Sequence record: OU343168.1
Length of the DNA stretch: 64,000 bases
Reading direction: 5' to 3' (one strand)
In this document: one piece after another, positions 39,003 to 43,968 of the stretch
Layout: every line of letters begins with the position of its first letter
Position numbering within the stretch: the first letter of the stretch is position 1
Made by a program: the position numbers and the translations under genes
The notes under the pieces: model-generated
Told to the model about the DNA's origin: nothing
Databases searched by the model: none
What the model saw: only the letters and a program-made list of their open reading frames with translations

Positions 39003-39596
39003 TTAATACGTGAGGGTGCCGTCGTAACGGAATTGTCCGTTAAAACGAGGAATGGCGTCGTATTGGCTTTCTACGACAGCCAGGGTACCGGTAACGGTGT
39101 TGGAATCAATGGTGGCCTGAGTGAACTCCCCGTCGAGGGTAATTTCATCATCCGTCAAGTCGTAGTAGCATTTGGCTTTGATCAGCGCTTTAATGTGTTC
39201 AGGGTTACGACTCCCTTTGAACACCAATACCGCTCCTTCAATGATATCTTCGTCTCGTTTGACTTGGTAAATACCTTCCACCCCCTGGGTTTGTAAAACG
39301 TCCCAATCAACCGGATCAGGGGTTTCCAGCATGGAGACCTTATTCTTCACATAATCCGCTGGGAGGTACCGTTGGTTCTTACCGGTCAGTTTACCTTCGG
39401 AATCGATATTGACCACCCGGGCAAATTCACCGCCTTCTACCTCAACTTTCCTGAGGTCAGAGAGGGTAGTATTATCCAGGGTGAGTTGCTCTAATACACT
39501 AACAATGTTCGGTTCATCGGAATAACGTTCTTTATTAAAAGCGATGAACCGTTCCAGAAACAGTAGATCGTTTGGAAAGGCCATGGGCGTGTCCAC
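39003..39596 (-). CDS. Tail-associated protein; paralogue of 26686-27315
   Basis: Shared N-terminus; C-terminal FNGQFRYDGTLTY motif typical of tail proteins; start may be ATG 39584. Confidence 0.65.
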   Translation of the reverse strand: MDTPMAFPNDLLFLERFIAFNKERYSDEPNIVSVLEQLTLDNTTLSDLRKVEVEGGEFARVVNIDSEGKLTGKNQRYLPADYVKNKVSMLETPDPVDWDVLQTQGVEGIYQVKRDEDIIEGAVLVFKGSRNPEHIKALIKAKCYYDLTDDEITLDGEFTQATIDSNTVTGTLAVVESQYDAIPRFNGQFRYDGTLTY

Positions 39597-39702
39597 AGAA
39601 GTAGATAGAGGGTTCGGTCATTAGACCATAAAATTGGTAAATAAAATAGTACCCAAACCCATATTCTTCACTTACCTGGTTATTTAACTTGAGGTTCTTT
39701 TC

Positions 39703-39722
39703 AAACCTACATAATCAGGGTG
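39703..39722 (+). promoter_or_regulatory. Early promoter motif AAACCTACATAAT-N4-GTG
   Basis: Start of the plus-strand early island. Confidence 0.7.
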
Positions 39723-39764
39723 AAGCACAGACAGAGACCGTTTAACGGTCAAGGAGCCTTGTCA

Positions 39765-39923
39765 ATGAATACCCTTCAGGCTAAAATTGAAAGCCTGCGC
39801 CAAAAAGCTCGTCGTTATGCCCGTCAGGCGATGTGTTCCCTAGAACCGTCTTACCGGCAACATTACCGTCAACTGAGCTACGAAGCCAGCCGTATGGCAG
39901 ATCGCCTTCAACGTCAACTGTGA
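39765..39923 (+). CDS. Small basic early protein
   Basis: SD AAGGAG; behind promoter 39703. Confidence 0.65.
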   Translation: MNTLQAKIESLRQKARRYARQAMCSLEPSYRQHYRQLSYEASRMADRLQRQL

Positions 39924-39961
39924 TTGGTGTTTACCCCCCTTCCCCCGCACACAGGTGTAAG

Positions 39962-40192
39962 ATGAGCAACGTTATCGATATGTTCAGCTGGCGGGACTCG
40001 AAGAATAAGCGTTCGAGTCAGTTCTCAGTGCTTCATCGTGAAATCGAAGCACTGTACGTCATTCAGAACCGCGCGCTTCAGGAGATCGCTTCAGCGGATA
40101 CAGTCTTGGCGTATGAACAAGCTAAACTCTTCCTGTTGGATGTCAGGATTGAAATTTACACCAAGACCATTGCGTTGAGTCAGTGTATCTAA
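39962..40192 (+). CDS. Small early protein
   Basis: SD AGGT before ATG 39962. Confidence 0.6.
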   Translation: MSNVIDMFSWRDSKNKRSSQFSVLHREIEALYVIQNRALQEIASADTVLAYEQAKLFLLDVRIEIYTKTIALSQCI

Positions 40193-40207
40193 GGACATTT
40201 AACGTCC

Positions 40208-40237
40208 AGTTGTAATCAGGTCTATATTACTTGGGTG
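40208..40237 (+). promoter_or_regulatory. Early promoter within 23-bp repeat AGTTGTAATCAGGTCTATATTAC (copy 1)
   Basis: Exact TATATTAC; 23 bp identical to 41497-41519. Confidence 0.8.
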
Positions 40238-40278
40238 TTTAAGTACGCAACATTCATTCCTTTTTGGAGGTGTACACC

Positions 40279-40758
40279 ATGGCTAAACAATCGAACTTCA
40301 CCATCGCCAACTACAACGCCGTCCTGGAAGCTGTTAAAGCCAACAACGGTTACGTGATCGACACCCACGGTGGTAGCCGTGGACCTTATCGTGCTGCTGG
40401 TATCGCCGCACTGGTGAAGGGCGAAAGGGTTACCCCGGTGCTGCTGTGCCATGGTTCCTACTTCTGCCTGAACTCGCTGCACAAGGAAGCCGATGGTTCG
40501 GTGACCCTCTCCAGCTGGTCGGTAGGTGGTACCATCTTCACCCACCAGCACGGTGGGCTGGAAGAAGCGATCCAAGCCTACAACAAGGAGCAATCCGAGT
40601 GGGCGCTGTCGGGCGGTCAACTGATGCATGTACGCATCTTCGACTACACCGACGAAACCGCACCTGTGTTCGGCGAGCCAGTTGATCTGGCAGGCGAAGT
40701 CGTGGGTGCGCTGGCAGCACAAGAGCCGATCGCCAAGGTCGACATCCCTGCTCAATAA
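40279..40758 (+). CDS. Hypothetical early protein, host-like codon usage
   Basis: SD GGAGGT; behind promoter 40218. Confidence 0.75.
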   Translation: MAKQSNFTIANYNAVLEAVKANNGYVIDTHGGSRGPYRAAGIAALVKGERVTPVLLCHGSYFCLNSLHKEADGSVTLSSWSVGGTIFTHQHGGLEEAIQAYNKEQSEWALSGGQLMHVRIFDYTDETAPVFGEPVDLAGEVVGALAAQEPIAKVDIPAQ

Positions 40759-40803
40759 CGAGCAGTTTTCTGTACGTAATCTGACTTCATTAGGAGCAAT
40801 GCC

Positions 40804-41211
40804 ATGAGTAATGTAATGCACGTTAGCACCATCGCCGGTCGTACCGCCCTGACGGTGATCACACCCGACGACCTGCCGGTTACCAACTGGATGGAAAATG
40901 TGCTTGCTGCACAGATCCAGAAAGTGGTTGACGAAGGTAAGGGTTGGCCCAACGACGCCGAGTTCAAGGTGGAGGTTACCTACCACACTTGGCCACAGGG
41001 TTGGGACCGGGAAGTGTACACGCACTTCTTTACCAACCGCGCCGAGCTGGACTCCTACATCAAGGACCAGCACGAGTGGGCCCGTTGTGAGGACAACATG
41101 GTGAAGATCAAGATCTACAACTGGGACCTCGGTCCGAACTTCATGGAAACTCGTGAGTTCGGTGGTCCTGAGTTGTGGAACAGCCCTCTGAGCCGTCCTT
41201 ACTTGACGTAA
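40804..41211 (+). CDS. Hypothetical early protein, host-like codon usage
   Basis: SD AGGAG; followed by a terminator. Confidence 0.75.
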   Translation: MSNVMHVSTIAGRTALTVITPDDLPVTNWMENVLAAQIQKVVDEGKGWPNDAEFKVEVTYHTWPQGWDREVYTHFFTNRAELDSYIKDQHEWARCEDNMVKIKIYNWDLGPNFMETREFGGPELWNSPLSRPYLT

Positions 41212-41219
41212 GGCTAGCG

Positions 41220-41248
41220 CTACCTCCCTGCCAGTGGCAGGGAGGTAG
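41220..41248 (+). terminator. Hairpin with T-rich tail
   Basis: CTACCTCCCTGCC/GGCAGGGAGGTAG. Confidence 0.75.
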
Positions 41249-41311
41249 TACTCCTTTTATTTTTTGCTTCATTTCCATTTTTATAGTTCACTCAACACAA
41301 CGAGCAAAGTA

Positions 41312-41452
41312 ATGCCTGACACTAACAACGGTCCTGTGGAAATAAAGATGGAACGTGTGCAGTTCAAAAGAATAAAAGTAAGGGGTCTTCGTAAATTCTG
41401 GTTACTCATCAAACGCTTACTGAGTAAGGACACCGATTATAAGAACACTTGA
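41312..41452 (+). CDS. Small basic hypothetical protein
   Basis: ATG in track ORF 41264-41452; weak SD. Confidence 0.4.
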   Translation: MPDTNNGPVEIKMERVQFKRIKVRGLRKFWLLIKRLLSKDTDYKNT

Positions 41453-41496
41453 CGAACGCATGGCTAAGTCAATGGAACTAAGGGTAATTAACTTCT

Positions 41497-41526
41497 AGTT
41501 GTAATCAGGTCTATATTACCTTTGTG
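41497..41526 (+). promoter_or_regulatory. Early promoter within 23-bp repeat (copy 2), upstream of the AmrZ-like gene
   Basis: Exact TATATTAC; 23 bp identical to 40208-40230. Confidence 0.8.
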
Positions 41527-41578
41527 TATATTAAGGCGTGGTTGCCTTCCTATTTTTAAGACTGAATAAACACAAAGG

Positions 41579-41935
41579 ATGTTATCTATGAGTCGAGTCA
41601 AGAAGGTGATGAAAGGTGTTCTGAAAGGTAACAGTCGAACGGCCGATAAGTTTGTATTACGGATGCCAGTCGGGCTACGTGATAAGGTTAGCAGACGCGC
41701 AACGACCAACGGGCGGAGTATGAATGCTGAATTCATCATGCTCATACAGGCTGCTATGAGCGGTGGGAACACAGGTGTAACCCAAATAAGGACTATTCCA
41801 TCAGTAGGTGGACCTGTTCGGGTTGAAGGACTTCCAGGCGTGGTAACTGAATTGATACCAACACCGACTGGATTTAAGATCCGGGCAAAAACCTGTGAGG
41901 GAGAGGATATTTATTCGTTATGGGAGATTGTTTGA
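41579..41935 (+). CDS. Arc/AmrZ-family ribbon-helix-helix DNA-binding protein
   Basis: SRTADKFVLRMPVGLRDKV....GRSMNAE versus recalled P. aeruginosa AmrZ SRTADKFVVRLPEGMREQI....HRSMNSE. Confidence 0.85.
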   Translation: MLSMSRVKKVMKGVLKGNSRTADKFVLRMPVGLRDKVSRRATTNGRSMNAEFIMLIQAAMSGGNTGVTQIRTIPSVGGPVRVEGLPGVVTELIPTPTGFKIRAKTCEGEDIYSLWEIV

Positions 41936-41936
41936 T

Positions 41937-42137
41937 ATGACTCGTTTCGAGAACTCGGATAAGGAAAAGAAACCCAGTGTTCCTTTGCAGAACAAAATCG
42001 GGTTTGCGGGGATAGGGCCCGACGATGAGCCCATGTTGTGGACACTCACCCTCCCCGGTGAAAACTCGGTGGGTTACGCAGAACCCTTTCGACCTGAGAA
42101 AGAAGACCTGATCCCTCAACCGGTCTTCTTCGATTAA
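41937..42137 (+). CDS. Small hypothetical protein
   Basis: ATG 1 nt after the RHH gene stop. Confidence 0.55.
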   Translation: MTRFENSDKEKKPSVPLQNKIGFAGIGPDDEPMLWTLTLPGENSVGYAEPFRPEKEDLIPQPVFFD

Positions 42138-42148
42138 AAGCGTCATAT

Positions 42149-42182
42149 ACCCTTACCCAGCCGAAAAGGGCTGGGTAAGGGT
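42149..42182. terminator. Bidirectional hairpin between convergent genes
   Basis: ACCCTTACCCAGCC/GGCTGGGTAAGGGT. Confidence 0.75.
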
Positions 42183-42201
42183 TAATCTCTTTATTTTTTG
42201 T

Positions 42202-42870
42202 TTACTTCACTTTGGTAACACACGACGATCTGACCAGTTCGGTGATACCGATCATCGTAGCTGCCACCGTCTCGGTGATCTTATCCACCTCGACCACCCC
42301 ACTCAGCAGTCCTTTCAGCTCATCGAGTCGCTTATTGAGGGCTTCCTTATCGGTGTCGTTACTGTAGTGGTTGATTTGACCTTCCACCTTGGCAATCTTG
42401 CTCTCCAGTACTCGGCGGGTCTCAAAGATGCTCATCCAACTGTTGGACATTGCTTCTTCACAACGACCGATTTTTCGGACAAATTCCTTAGCGGAATTGA
42501 GGTCTTTGATCGTTGTCACTTTAGGCAAGCCGATAAGTCCATTCACGTATTGCTGGATACCAATAACCATGCCATCCGCTACGCCAGAATCCTCACCTTC
42601 ATCTGCCAGTTTCTGGTACTTCGCTTTACGCTCATTCAAACGAGCCACCGCGGCTTCCAGTTTGGCGACCTGATTGCGCATTAGACTGCTGTGAATGATT
42701 CTGGACTCAAAGACTTCCTCGATCACCTTCTTGGCCTGTTCGGGTTGGTGTTCCACCGGAAGGGCTTTAATGTCGTCAAGTTTCTTAACCACGGTCTCCT
42801 TGGCGCTTTGGTCCTCGATCTTGTTGGCGACTACGGTGCTGCAGAGTATTACCTCGGTATTCCCCCACAA
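42202..42870 (-). CDS. N-terminally shortened paralogue of the upstream head protein
   Basis: Shares NGLIGLP and RC-x-EAMSNSWMSIF with 42931-43968; TTG start with AGGA 10 nt upstream; in-frame stop just upstream. Confidence 0.6.
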   Translation of the reverse strand: MWGNTEVILCSTVVANKIEDQSAKETVVKKLDDIKALPVEHQPEQAKKVIEEVFESRIIHSSLMRNQVAKLEAAVARLNERKAKYQKLADEGEDSGVADGMVIGIQQYVNGLIGLPKVTTIKDLNSAKEFVRKIGRCEEAMSNSWMSIFETRRVLESKIAKVEGQINHYSNDTDKEALNKRLDELKGLLSGVVEVDKITETVAATMIGITELVRSSCVTKVK

Positions 42871-42930: not shown

Positions 42931-43968
42931 TTATTCAACGGTTACAATGCATTTACGCAACACAACCGCAATATCCGACATGGCCAGTGTCACTTTGGTG
43001 GTGTTCTCGCCCACCCGGTTGATACCCTGGAGATGCTGCTTCAGTTCCTTGATCTGTGCATCCAGTTCTTTGTTCACTTTATCATCACCCGTCCAGTGGT
43101 TGATTTTCTCCGACACCTCACTGATCTTCTTCTGGACCGCCTGTTGGCTGTTGAAGATGCTCATCCAGCTGTTGGACATGGCTTCCTGGCAGCGCCTCAG
43201 CTTGGCCAAGAACGCCTTGGCGGTTTCCAAGTTGGTGATGCTGGTAATACCAGGCAGGCCGATCAGACCGTTCAGGTAGGTCTGAATACTACCTGCCATA
43301 TCACTGTCATCATCAGTTTTGGCATACTCTTCCTTGAGCGCTGTCAAGTTTTCGGCAGCTTGTTTCAGTTGAGCGGCATGCTGCTTCAGCTTGGCATTGT
43401 CTTCCAGCGAGGCTTCGAAAACTTCGCTGACCAGTTTCTTCACCGCCGCCGGTTGGCTGCTCTCTGGCATGGTCTTGATCTTTTCCGCTTCCGCCTTCAA
43501 CTTGGCTTTCTCGGCATCGGCCTGTTTGATCTGATCGATCCGTGCCCACAAGGCCTTCATGATCTTTTCGTTGGCCGCTTTATCAGCCGGTGTTTGTTCA
43601 GCTTTCTTGATCACTTCCTCGGTCTTCTGGATCTCGACCTTGACTTCTTCCTGGCGGTCCTTCACCTTCTTCTTGAAGAACCCACCGAAGATCGATTTGA
43701 ACAGGTTCTTGATGTATTCCCAGGCTTTCTTAATCCCTTCACCAATCGACGACAGGAAACCCTCATTCCCCGCCACTTCATTACGGGTCAGGTAACCCGC
43801 GGTATGGAGAACGGACTGAAGGTAACGCTGATTCGCGGTCAGGTCCATTCCTTCAGTTCCCATGACCGTATCCGAGAGACCGTCGAGCACTTGCTCAATG
43901 TGTTCCATTTCTGGAACACCGTCCATCAGTTCGTCTTCGTATTCAACCGTATTGGCTTGCTGATTCAT
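42931..43968 (-). CDS. Internal head protein with acidic propeptide (phiKZ-type head paralogue family)
   Basis: Acidic N-terminus with G-x-E sites (GTE-G, GNE-GF) matching the (S/A/G)-X-E prohead-protease consensus; strong codon bias. Confidence 0.7.
   Translation of the reverse strand: MNQQANTVEYEDELMDGVPEMEHIEQVLDGLSDTVMGTEGMDLTANQRYLQSVLHTAGYLTRNEVAGNEGFLSSIGEGIKKAWEYIKNLFKSIFGGFFKKKVKDRQEEVKVEIQKTEEVIKKAEQTPADKAANEKIMKALWARIDQIKQADAEKAKLKAEAEKIKTMPESSQPAAVKKLVSEVFEASLEDNAKLKQHAAQLKQAAENLTALKEEYAKTDDDSDMAGSIQTYLNGLIGLPGITSITNLETAKAFLAKLRRCQEAMSNSWMSIFNSQQAVQKKISEVSEKINHWTGDDKVNKELDAQIKELKQHLQGINRVGENTTKVTLAMSDIAVVLRKCIVTVE

What the first reader, a model, noticed from the sequence alone, without database searches (positions are those of the whole stretch)
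41579..41935. Phage-encoded AmrZ mimic expressed early
Seen: SRTADKFVLR...RSMNAE, which keeps residues equivalent to AmrZ R14, K18, V20 and R22 of the DNA-reading beta-sheet, but has a different C-terminus (GPVRVEGLPGVV...). Established: P. aeruginosa AmrZ controls alginate, pili, flagella and c-di-GMP genes, and phage AmrZ homologues were reported to repress CRISPR-Cas expression. Inference: a lytic jumbo phage rewires host surface or immunity genes, or acts dominant-negatively by heterodimerising with AmrZ.
Basis: partly seen in the sequence, partly recalled or inferred. Interest (0 to 1): 0.75.

Follow-up and report, generated by a model that had tools for sequence, protein, structure and literature searches.

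The report
AmrZ-like DNA-binding protein of jumbo phage

Summary
Window 41579-41935 (+) is an intact ORF, with the likely start at 41588 (115 aa). It is the orthologue of Pseudomonas phage EL gp163, and the window is phage phiRU (Elvirus, nucleus-forming jumbo phage).

- **DNA-binding domain:** residues 19-61 are an Arc-type ribbon-helix-helix domain (Pfam 55 bits). AmrZ is the best solved match, and the equivalents of AmrZ S13, R14, K18, V20, R22, R28 and R40-N43 are all kept.
- **"AmrZ mimic" is too specific:** 57 of the 150 best relatives carry the same K-V-R head. The domain is only 44% identical to AmrZ and ranks 118 of 185 for AmrZ-likeness among its own relatives.
- **C-terminus:** it is a small beta domain with no Pfam model. 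It is probably shared with phage regulators already tested: PaBG gp184 (represses CRISPR-Cas) and PhiPA1019 Gp53 (early; binds the fleQ, pslA, amrZ and ftsZ promoters).
- **Variation:** the domain-coding part is a divergence hot-spot (9% against 0-2% in the flanks). Three of 14 full-length public alleles, EL's included, carry Trp instead of the key Arg, linked to Gly-to-Glu.
- **Untested:** early expression, host targets and pairing with AmrZ.

Verdict: new member of a known kind.

The parts
41588..41935 (+). Gene for the 115-aa AmrZ-like RHH protein, the orthologue of EL gp163. An alternative upstream ATG at 41579 would give 118 aa.
   Evidence: ORF list and sequence; EL annotation starts at the equivalent of 41588; Pfam Arc 55.2 bits.
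41633..41761 (+). [quoted passage not shown] It holds S19, R20, K24, V26, R28, R34 and R46-N49, the equivalents of AmrZ S13, R14, K18, V20, R22, R28 and R40-N43.
   Evidence: (Foldseek top hit 3qoq_D, TM 0.74 on the target).
41660..41662 (+). Codon CGG for the Arg equivalent to AmrZ R22. It is TGG (Trp) in EL-type alleles, always together with Gly-to-Glu four residues later.
   Evidence: AmrZ R22 makes a bidentate contact to guanine; the equivalent R15A abolishes DNA binding in Gp53.
41792..41932 (+). C-terminal small beta domain. Four strands are predicted and the fold is SH3/KOW/Tudor-like. No Pfam model covers it. It is nearly invariant among Elvirus alleles.
   Evidence: AlphaFold model, pLDDT 76-80 in this part; weak barrel matches; no Pfam hit in 10 family members; C-terminus-only profile test 12.0-17.5 bits with at most 1 of 20000 shuffles as good; Nd 1 against Sd 5.
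41488..41519 (+). Promoter-like element TTAACT-N18-TATATTAC. Its 23-nt core AGTTGTAATCAGGTCTATATTAC is repeated exactly at 40208-40230, upstream of the gp161 orthologue, and occurs nowhere else in the window or in EL. It is related to the canonical Elvirus motif in about 13 of 22 positions.
41534..41547 (+). Palindrome AGGC-N6-GCCT in the leader between the promoter-like element and the Shine-Dalgarno sequence. It is a candidate self-operator, because AmrZ-type heads read GGC half-sites.
   Evidence: Unique in the window, but not significant by count: 34 of 100 shuffles have at least one. AmrZ half-site GGC with a 5-bp linker. Its role is inference only.
41937..42137 (+). Overlapping, probably co-transcribed 66-aa ORF (EL gp164 orthologue; the stop and start form TGATATG). 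It is an Elvirus-only orphan.
   Evidence: no Pfam, PHROG or PADLOC hit; only EL-type relatives found.
41219..41249 (+). Strong intrinsic-terminator-like hairpin (14 pairs) that closes the upstream gp161-gp162 unit.
   Evidence: GXNNE2 has a different sequence here that still forms a hairpin.
42149..42182 (+). Terminator-like hairpin (14 pairs) that closes the gp163-gp164 unit.
39699..39716 (+). Canonical Elvirus promoter motif (TTTCAAACCTACATAATC) at the head of the + strand cluster of small genes gp159-gp164.
   Evidence: 5 sites in the window against 0.36 expected; annotated as 'putative phage promoter' in EL.

Best explanation
The gene encodes a sequence-specific DNA-binding regulator. It belongs to a phage family of 'AmrZ-type RHH head plus C-terminal small beta domain' proteins, the same architecture as PaBG gp184 and PhiPA1019 Gp53 / SM1 gp115.

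Shown here: the RHH fold, full retention of the AmrZ DNA-contact set in the phiRU allele, probable homology of the C-terminal domain to that family, and a self-contained two-gene unit with its own promoter-like element and terminator.

Inferred: two monomers pair their beta strands and read GGC-type half-sites in the major groove. The beta domain takes the place of AmrZ's C-terminal tetramerisation domain and joins dimers or binds a partner. Because the phage DNA sits inside a protein shell, the protein most likely acts in the cytoplasm on host promoters that overlap the AmrZ regulon (motility, exopolysaccharide, c-di-GMP, perhaps cell division), as Gp53 does. It may also repress its own leader at the AGGC-N6-GCCT palindrome.

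Confidence is about 0.9 that it is an AmrZ-subfamily RHH DNA binder of this phage family. It is about 0.45 that its main targets are host promoters. The figure below is for the whole statement.
For: - Pfam Arc 55.2 bits. AmrZ is the best match among solved structures by sequence and by fold.
- All AmrZ base and backbone contacts are kept.
- The alignment with PaBG gp184, SM1 gp115, Noxifer gp106 and P0092 extends through the C-terminal domain. The C-terminus-only profile scores 12.0-17.5 bits, and at most 1 of 20000 shuffles does as well.
- SM1 gp115 has R15, R21, M35 and N36 exactly where the Gp53 paper mutated them. Gp53 is early and binds the fleQ, pslA, amrZ and ftsZ promoters.
- 5 of 6 mobile AmrZ homologues complemented a delta-amrZ strain, and the PaBG homologue lowered Csy levels.
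- The C-terminal domain is under purifying selection (Nd 1, Sd 5).
- The unit is bounded by terminators and has its own promoter-like element.
- EL encodes a nuclear shell protein and its own RNA polymerases.
Against: - There is no experimental datum for any Elvirus protein.
- The RHH is the least AmrZ-like of the phage examples compared: 44% identity to AmrZ, against 56% for the Gp53 type and 81% for PaBG.
- AmrZ's dimer-dimer contact residues are not kept, so half-site spacing and targets may differ.
- C-terminal homology is statistically weak without the bridging sequences (12 bits).
- EL-type alleles replace the key Arg with Trp and a near-invariant Gly with Glu. DNA reading is therefore dispensable or altered in part of the lineage.
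- Whether the protein stays in the cytoplasm or enters the phage nucleus is unknown.
- AmrZ-type GGC-N5-GCC sites are not enriched in the window (6 found, 8.4 expected). This fits non-phage targets but proves nothing.
Confidence: 0.5

Rival explanations
1. It is a phage-directed regulator. Like Arc and Mnt in P22, it represses its own promoter and perhaps the neighbouring gp161-gp162 unit, which has the same 23-nt promoter core, to time a small gene cluster. Host genes are not its target.
For: RHH proteins commonly autoregulate; AmrZ itself does so at amrZ1. The unique AGGC-N6-GCCT palindrome lies between the promoter-like element and the Shine-Dalgarno sequence. An exact 23-nt element is shared only by the two adjacent units. 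The upstream spacer is almost invariant in six phages.
Against: The palindrome is not statistically unusual and is absent from the gp161 copy. The shared 23-mer holds no GGC half-site pair. To act on phage DNA the protein would have to enter the phage nucleus. No DNA-binding regulator of the phage RNA polymerases turned up in the papers read here. The spacer invariance may only reflect a recent common origin, since gp162 is also identical.
Confidence: 0.25
2. Its main role does not depend on DNA binding. The conserved C-terminal beta domain binds a host or phage protein, for example RNA polymerase, AmrZ or its protease adaptor. The RHH serves mainly for dimerisation, which would explain why Trp alleles persist.
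For: The C-terminal domain is nearly invariant, while the RHH part is a divergence hot-spot (9.0% against 0-2% in the flanks). Linked R-to-W and G-to-E alleles occur in isolates from several countries. Weak fold resemblance to Tudor/KOW-type protein- and nucleic-acid-binding barrels.
Against: 11 of the 14 distinct full-length alleles keep the complete DNA-contact set. Family members that have been tested act through DNA binding: Gp53 point mutants lose both binding and phenotype. The fold matches are not significant (E 0.5-1). No partner is known.
Confidence: 0.12
3. It acts as a dominant-negative by forming mixed dimers or tetramers with host AmrZ.
For: The hydrophobic core positions of the RHH are conservatively kept. 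RHH dimers are intertwined, so mixed dimers of related chains are conceivable (inference).
Against: Only 44% identity to the AmrZ RHH. The AmrZ dimer-dimer contacts H39 and E51 and the loop residues Y11 and E25 are changed. AmrZ tetramerises through a C-terminal domain that this protein lacks (ref. 28).
Confidence: 0.05
4. It is the antitoxin-like or regulator half of a two-gene module with the overlapping downstream ORF gp164, either a toxin-antitoxin pair or a regulator-plus-effector pair.
For: An RHH gene lies first, with a small overlapping ORF second (TGATATG), and the two share a promoter and a terminator. Weak sub-threshold FitA-like RHH similarity (17.9 bits against a cut-off of 27).
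Against: gp164 matches no toxin, defence or phage family and is an Elvirus-only orphan. Relatives in SM1, PaBG and Noxifer have unrelated downstream genes. The C-terminal part is a folded beta domain rather than the usual toxin-wrapping tail.
Confidence: 0.05

Closest known systems
PhiPA1019 Gp53 (Commun Biol 2026, PMC13650114), the orthologue of Samunavirus SM1 gp115
   Same: Phage-encoded. AmrZ-type RHH with the K-V-R head and the R-S-M-N helix cap. Followed by a C-terminal beta domain of the 'W-x-P-x-x-G-x-x-V' type. Gp53 is early, binds the fleQ, pslA, amrZ and ftsZ promoters, and loses binding with R15A, the equivalent of the Arg that is Trp in EL.
   Different: About 34% identity over 97 aligned residues. 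Gp53 comes from a 94-kb phage, not a nucleus-forming jumbo phage (siphovirus as I recall it; the records give only genus Samunavirus). The Elvirus beta domain is shorter: it lacks the last 'L-x-P' segment and has T/I in place of the Trp. Nothing has been tested for the Elvirus protein.
PaBG gp184, the 'AmrZ_PaBG' of Borges et al. (bioRxiv 10.1101/673095)
   Same: A lytic Pseudomonas jumbo phage with the same two-domain architecture. The C-terminal ends align (QDIYPME against EDIYSLWE). It was reported to lower Csy complex levels.
   Different: The PaBG RHH is 81% identical to AmrZ against 44% here, and it keeps Y11 and H39. PaBG belongs to the genus Baikalvirus. As I recall it is not a nucleus-forming phage; this was not checked here.
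P. aeruginosa AmrZ (PA3385; PDB 3QOQ)
   Same: Best solved match by sequence and by fold. S13, R14, K18, V20, R22, R28 and R40-N43 are all conserved.
   Different: 44% identity in the RHH. Y11, E25, H39 and E51 are not kept. The C-terminal oligomerisation domain is replaced by an unrelated beta domain. Hundreds of other Arc-family proteins are closer to this protein than AmrZ is.
P22 Arc and Mnt repressors
   Same: Same Pfam family. These are phage RHH repressors that bind operators as tetramers.
   Different: They read different bases: Arc uses Q-N-R and Mnt uses H-N-R instead of K-V-R (alignments). Mnt tetramerises through its C-terminal domain, a coiled coil as I recall it, and Arc has no C-terminal domain.

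Membership tests
Arc-like RHH DNA-binding domain (Pfam PF03869) | Profile score above the curated gathering cut-off | tested here: met
   55.2 bits against a cut-off of 20.4, E 6.4e-15, residues 19-61.
Arc-like RHH DNA-binding domain (Pfam PF03869) | Strand-helix-helix fold with the helix-2 N-cap motif (R-S-M-N) | tested here: met
   The model shows helices 30-41 and 45-58. The strand is not formed in a monomer model. Foldseek top hit is AmrZ 3qoq_D, TM 0.74 on the target, rmsd 1.3 Å. RSMN is present.
AmrZ orthologue (Pseudomonas PA3385 type) | Base-reading residues K18, V20 and R22, plus S13 and R14 of the N-terminal arm | tested here: met
   All are kept in phiRU. EL-type alleles have W at the R22 position.
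AmrZ orthologue (Pseudomonas PA3385 type) | AmrZ C-terminal tetramerisation domain (residues 67-108) | tested here: not met
   The C-terminal part is a predicted four-strand beta domain with no similarity to AmrZ beyond residue 59.
AmrZ orthologue (Pseudomonas PA3385 type) | AmrZ is among the closest relatives | tested here: not met
   AmrZ scores 35 bits, while the best non-Elvirus relatives score 57-65 bits and 1012 proteins pass E 0.001. The protein ranks 118 of 185 for similarity to the AmrZ RHH.
AmrZ orthologue (Pseudomonas PA3385 type) | Residues that shape the N-terminal loop and the dimer-dimer contact (Y11, E25, H39, E51) | tested here: not met
   These are G, V, G and Q in phiRU.
AmrZ orthologue (Pseudomonas PA3385 type) | Binds amrZ1 and algD operators and complements delta-amrZ | not testable with these tools
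   Needs EMSA and genetics.
Phage AmrZ-like RHH plus beta-domain family (Gp53 / SM1 gp115, PaBG gp184, Noxifer gp106) | N-terminal RHH with the K-V-R head | tested here: met
Phage AmrZ-like RHH plus beta-domain family (Gp53 / SM1 gp115, PaBG gp184, Noxifer gp106) | Homologous C-terminal beta domain ('W-x-P-x-x-G-x-x-V ... G-x-I') | tested here: inconclusive
   The C-terminus-only profile scores 12.0 bits (1 of 20000 shuffles as good) without bridging sequences, and 17.5 bits (0 of 20000) with them. It aligns through to the C-terminal end with PaBG. The Trp is replaced and the last segment is missing. Homology is probable but not proven.
Phage AmrZ-like RHH plus beta-domain family (Gp53 / SM1 gp115, PaBG gp184, Noxifer gp106) | Early expression and binding to host promoters | not testable with these tools
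   No Elvirus transcriptome or binding data were found.
Type II toxin-antitoxin RHH antitoxin | Adjacent gene of a known toxin family, and an antitoxin-type RHH profile above its cut-off | tested here: not met
   gp164 has no hit in Pfam, PHROGs or PADLOC. FitA-like RHH scores 17.9 bits, below its cut-off of 27.
Partition protein (the RefSeq label 'partition protein ATPase'; ParG-like) | An ATPase domain, or an adjacent ParA/ParF ATPase gene | tested here: not met
   The protein is 115 aa and holds only an RHH and a beta domain. The neighbours have no such family. The label comes from the names of phrog_2685 and phrog_795.

The most novel reading that the evidence does not exclude
A nucleus-forming jumbo phage transcribes its own genome behind a protein shell with its own polymerases. 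It nevertheless makes a cytoplasmic AmrZ-type transcription factor whose only accessible substrate is the host chromosome. That would be the first host-directed DNA-binding regulator of a chimallivirus. Its sharply bounded divergence hot-spot and the linked Arg-to-Trp / Gly-to-Glu alleles would then reflect ongoing selection on what it reads or on what recognises it. The unannotated C-terminal beta domain, shared with PaBG gp184 and Gp53, would define a phage-specific replacement for AmrZ's tetramerisation domain.
Probability: 0.25. Interest if true: 0.6.

Novelty: new member of a known kind. Interest (0 to 1): 0.4.

Why it matters
Phage copies of the host regulator AmrZ are already known to repress CRISPR-Cas (Borges et al.) and to reprogram motility, biofilm and cell division (Gp53, 2026). 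This gene extends that family to the EL-like nucleus-forming jumbo phages, where no paper in the searched library links such a gene to AmrZ. In those phages a DNA-binding protein raises a clean question: does it act on the exposed host chromosome or does it enter the phage nucleus?

The comparison also shows that the tested phage 'AmrZ homologues' share a C-terminal beta domain that AmrZ lacks and that no Pfam model covers. Natural Elvirus alleles differ at the key DNA-reading arginine, so matched Arg and Trp variants are available for experiments. The gene is not needed to explain any known Elvirus phenotype, and the general idea is not new, so the interest is moderate.

Tried and rejected
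- **Generic early promoter:** TATATTAC occurs only 3 times in the window, which is not significant. The 23-nt core occurs only twice in the window and in EL. The canonical Elvirus motif is different (TTTnAAACCTACATTATY). The upstream element is a variant of it, so 'early' cannot be read from it.
- **Leader stem hiding the Shine-Dalgarno sequence:** a stem between 41519-35 and 41562-78 is predicted, but z is -1.5 and 19 of 200 shuffles fold as well. The likely transcript start would also cut off its left arm. Rejected.
- **Rfam scan of 39500-42300:** no match.
- **BFVD fold search:** no match below E 0.001. The PDB fold search gave AmrZ and Arc for the RHH and only weak barrel matches for the C-terminus.
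- **Word-indexed protein search:** only 7 hits. The exhaustive search was needed.
- **gp164 and neighbouring genes:** no family matched.
- **IMG/VR scan for more Elvirus alleles:** only EL itself. Alleles came instead from the 90% identity clusters.
- **Borges et al. supplementary list of 14 elements:** not held as text, so I could not tell whether EL is on it.
- **Ceyssens 2014 (phiKZ promoters):** not held.
- **Enrichment of AmrZ-type GGC-N5-GCC sites in the window:** none, 6 found against 8.4 expected.
- **Excess amino-acid change in the RHH part over the C-terminal part:** suggestive only, Fisher p 0.06-0.08.
- **Dimer or heterodimer modelling:** not possible, because the structure tool takes one chain.

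Full report
**What is there.** The window is positions 124001-188000 of Pseudomonas phage vB_PaeM_phiRU (OU343168.1, 100% identity). This is an EL-like phage of 211.9 kb, and eight other Elvirus records match at 96-98%. EL encodes a nuclear shell protein, PhuZ tubulin and split multisubunit RNA polymerases, so 'lytic jumbo phage' is correct, and more precisely it is of the nucleus-forming type. The ORF 41579..41935 (+) is real. A Shine-Dalgarno AAGGA at 41575-79 overlaps the first ATG and lies 8 nt before the second one at 41588, which is where EL gp163 is annotated. The product is therefore probably 115 aa.

**The DNA-binding domain.**
- Residues 19-61 (118-aa numbering) match Pfam Arc PF03869 at 55.2 bits, against a cut-off of 20.4. 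PHROG families of Arc-like regulators match at about 1e-15.
- Among solved structures AmrZ (3QOQ) is best by sequence (E 8.5e-8), ahead of Mnt and Arc. It is also best by fold (3qoq_D, TM 0.74 on the target, rmsd 1.3 Å).
- Against the AmrZ-DNA structure paper (PMC3325190), every base or backbone contact is kept in phiRU: S13, R14, K18, V20, R22, R28 and R40-N43.
- Not kept are Y11 and E25, which hold AmrZ's N-terminal loop, and H39 and E51, which form the dimer-dimer contact. These are G, V, G and Q here.

**How specific is the resemblance to AmrZ?** Not very.
- An exhaustive HMMER search of 1.84 billion representatives found 1012 proteins at E <= 0.001. Of the best 150, 57 have the same K-V-R head and many carry SRTADKFV itself.
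- The domain is 44% identical to AmrZ residues 11-53, against 56% for SM1 gp115, 79% for Noxifer gp106, 81% for PaBG gp184 and 86% for P0092.
- It ranks 118 of 185 for similarity to AmrZ among its own relatives.
- It is a diverged member of the AmrZ-like branch of the Arc family, not a close copy.

**The C-terminus.**
- An AlphaFold model built on 18 sequences (mean pLDDT 71) gives the two RHH helices, a low-confidence linker, and four strands at residues 76-108 with pLDDT 76-80.
- Fold matches to SH3/KOW/Tudor-type barrels (eIF5A, EF-P, the UvrD Tudor domain) are weak, E 0.5-1.2.
- A set of relatives carries a similar tail after the RHH, 'W-I/T-P-x-x-G-x-L-V ... G-x-I ... L-x-P'. They include PaBG gp184, SM1 gp115, Noxifer gp106 and P0092, which sits on a 221-kb phage-like contig.
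- A profile built from the tails alone scores the phiRU tail at 12.0 bits without the three bridging sequences (1 of 20000 shuffles as good) and 17.5 bits with them (0 of 20000). Homology is probable but not proven.
- No Pfam model covers this domain in any of 10 members.
- AmrZ's own C-terminal domain mediates tetramerisation, so a role in joining dimers is the natural inference.

**Known relatives with data.**
- Borges et al. (10.1101/673095) found 14 Pseudomonas mobile elements with AmrZ homologues. Five of six tested complemented delta-amrZ, and the PaBG, phi3 and JBD68 proteins lowered Csy levels. Their list is an image, so I could not see whether EL is on it.
- A 2026 paper (PMC13650114) shows that Gp53 of the 94-kb phage PhiPA1019 is early. 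It binds the fleQ, pslA, amrZ and ftsZ promoters, and it loses binding and phenotype with R15A, R21A, M35A or N36A.
- SM1 gp115 has exactly R15, R21, M35 and N36, so Gp53 is that Samunavirus protein. These were the best full-length non-Elvirus phage matches to the query.
- The phiRU protein thus belongs, probably, to a family with two tested members that act on AmrZ-regulon promoters.
- No paper in the searched library links Elvirus with AmrZ.

**Variation.**
- Between phiRU and EL the RHH-coding part differs at 21 of 234 nt (9.0%) and the C-terminal part at 6 of 123 (4.9%). gp162 is identical (0 of 408), the 367-nt spacer has 1 change, and gp161 and gp164 differ by about 2%.
- Changes in the RHH part are mostly amino-acid changing (Nd 13.5, Sd 7.5). 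The C-terminal part is conserved (Nd 1, Sd 5). The contrast is suggestive only (Fisher p 0.06-0.08).
- EL, GXNNE2 and IR-QUMS have Trp (TGG for CGG) at the AmrZ-R22 position and Glu for the near-invariant Gly of 'P-x-G-L-R'.
- Among the 14 distinct full-length sequences in public assemblies, 11 keep Arg and 3 carry the linked Trp/Glu pair. The remaining distinct sequence (P0160) is a fragment that does not cover this position. One of the 14 is an 86-aa frameshift form that also keeps Arg.
- AmrZ R22 makes the bidentate contact to guanine, and the equivalent Gp53 R15A abolishes binding. EL-type proteins therefore probably bind DNA poorly or differently (inference).

**Transcription context.**
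- The + strand cluster gp159-gp164 is headed by a canonical Elvirus promoter motif at 39699. There are five such sites in the window against 0.36 expected. A review says the motif that can be found bioinformatically in such phages marks early promoters (PMC7598289).
- gp163 lies behind a 14-pair terminator hairpin at 41219-41249. It has its own element, TTAACT-N18-TATATTAC, whose 23-nt core recurs exactly only upstream of gp161. That core matches the canonical motif at about 13 of 22 positions.
- A second hairpin at 42149-42182 closes a two-gene unit with the overlapping orphan gp164.
- 'Early' is therefore plausible but not shown. No EL transcriptome was found.
- A palindrome AGGC-N6-GCCT at 41534-47 sits where a self-operator would be. 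It is unique in the window but not statistically unusual.

**Mechanism and rivals.**
- **Best explanation (0.5 overall):** an RHH dimer-of-dimers reading GGC-type half-sites. It acts mainly on host promoters, because the phage DNA is enclosed, and it possibly also represses its own leader.
- **Phage-directed autoregulator (0.25).**
- **DNA-independent role of the conserved beta domain (0.12).**
- **Dominant-negative pairing with AmrZ (0.05).**
- **Toxin-antitoxin-like pair with gp164 (0.05).**
- CRISPR repression is a weak rationale here, because nucleus-forming phages already shield their DNA from DNA-targeting CRISPR-Cas. That point rests on general knowledge and was not tested.
- phiKZ infection induces many AlgU-type host promoters, and amrZ expression depends on AlgU. 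This makes interference with the host AlgU-AmrZ response a reasonable lead, and no more than that.

**Verdict.** This is a new, diverged member of a known kind of phage AmrZ-like regulator, with an unannotated shared C-terminal domain and a natural Arg/Trp polymorphism as the most useful new points. Interest 0.4.

Noticed in passing
window 42202-42870 (-): phiRU has an extra ORF of 221-222 aa. It is 39% identical to the C-terminal two-thirds of its neighbour at 42931-43968 (-), the EL gp165 type (phrog_21850). It is absent from EL and the other Elvirus genomes, which explains their 79% coverage of this 4-kb stretch.
   Followed up: partly
window 41312-41452 (+): A 46-aa ORF lies in the gp162-gp163 spacer, which is almost invariant in six phages. 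It is annotated in MIZ-Pa99, HHBS47_1, GXNNE2 and IR-QUMS but not in EL. It has no family match.
   Followed up: partly
window 41200-41260; L004 1122-1180: GXNNE2 carries a completely different sequence at the terminator after gp162, and it still forms a GC-rich hairpin followed by a T run. The terminator was replaced along with a variant gp161-gp162 segment.
   Followed up: no
EL NC_007623.1 165916-166263; MIZ-Pa99 PV472050.1 164391-165049: Annotation errors. RefSeq calls EL gp163 'partition protein ATPase', a label inherited from PHROG names, although the protein is a 115-aa RHH. The MIZ-Pa99 record misses the gene and calls two antisense ORFs, and it files the phage under Straboviridae.
   Followed up: yes
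proteins P0158-P0170 (clusters of P0001 and P0002): Many alleles of this phage protein are deposited as 'Arc family DNA-binding protein [Pseudomonas aeruginosa]' on contigs of 206-214 kb. Whole EL-like phage genomes therefore sit inside bacterial isolate assemblies. One 86-aa frameshift form is seen on 10 contigs.
   Followed up: partly
window 8288, 18605, 27391, 39699, 57448 (+): Five copies of the canonical Elvirus promoter motif TTTnAAACCTACATTATY, all on the + strand ahead of clusters of small genes. They match the nine 'putative phage promoter' features of the EL record.
   Followed up: partly
L012 6001-6369 and L017 6001-6399: The closest non-Elvirus relative, P0009, lies on phage-like metagenome contigs next to an antisense SNF2-type helicase. 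This echoes the gp163 ... helicase gp166 arrangement in EL. P0092, whose RHH is 86% identical to AmrZ and which also has the beta domain, lies on a 221.7-kb contig of small unknown genes that is probably another jumbo phage.
   Followed up: no
window 41509-41533: The promoter core is duplicated in tandem: GTCTATATTA at 41509-18 and GTGTATATTA at 41524-33, 15 nt apart. These could be two overlapping promoter cores.
   Followed up: no
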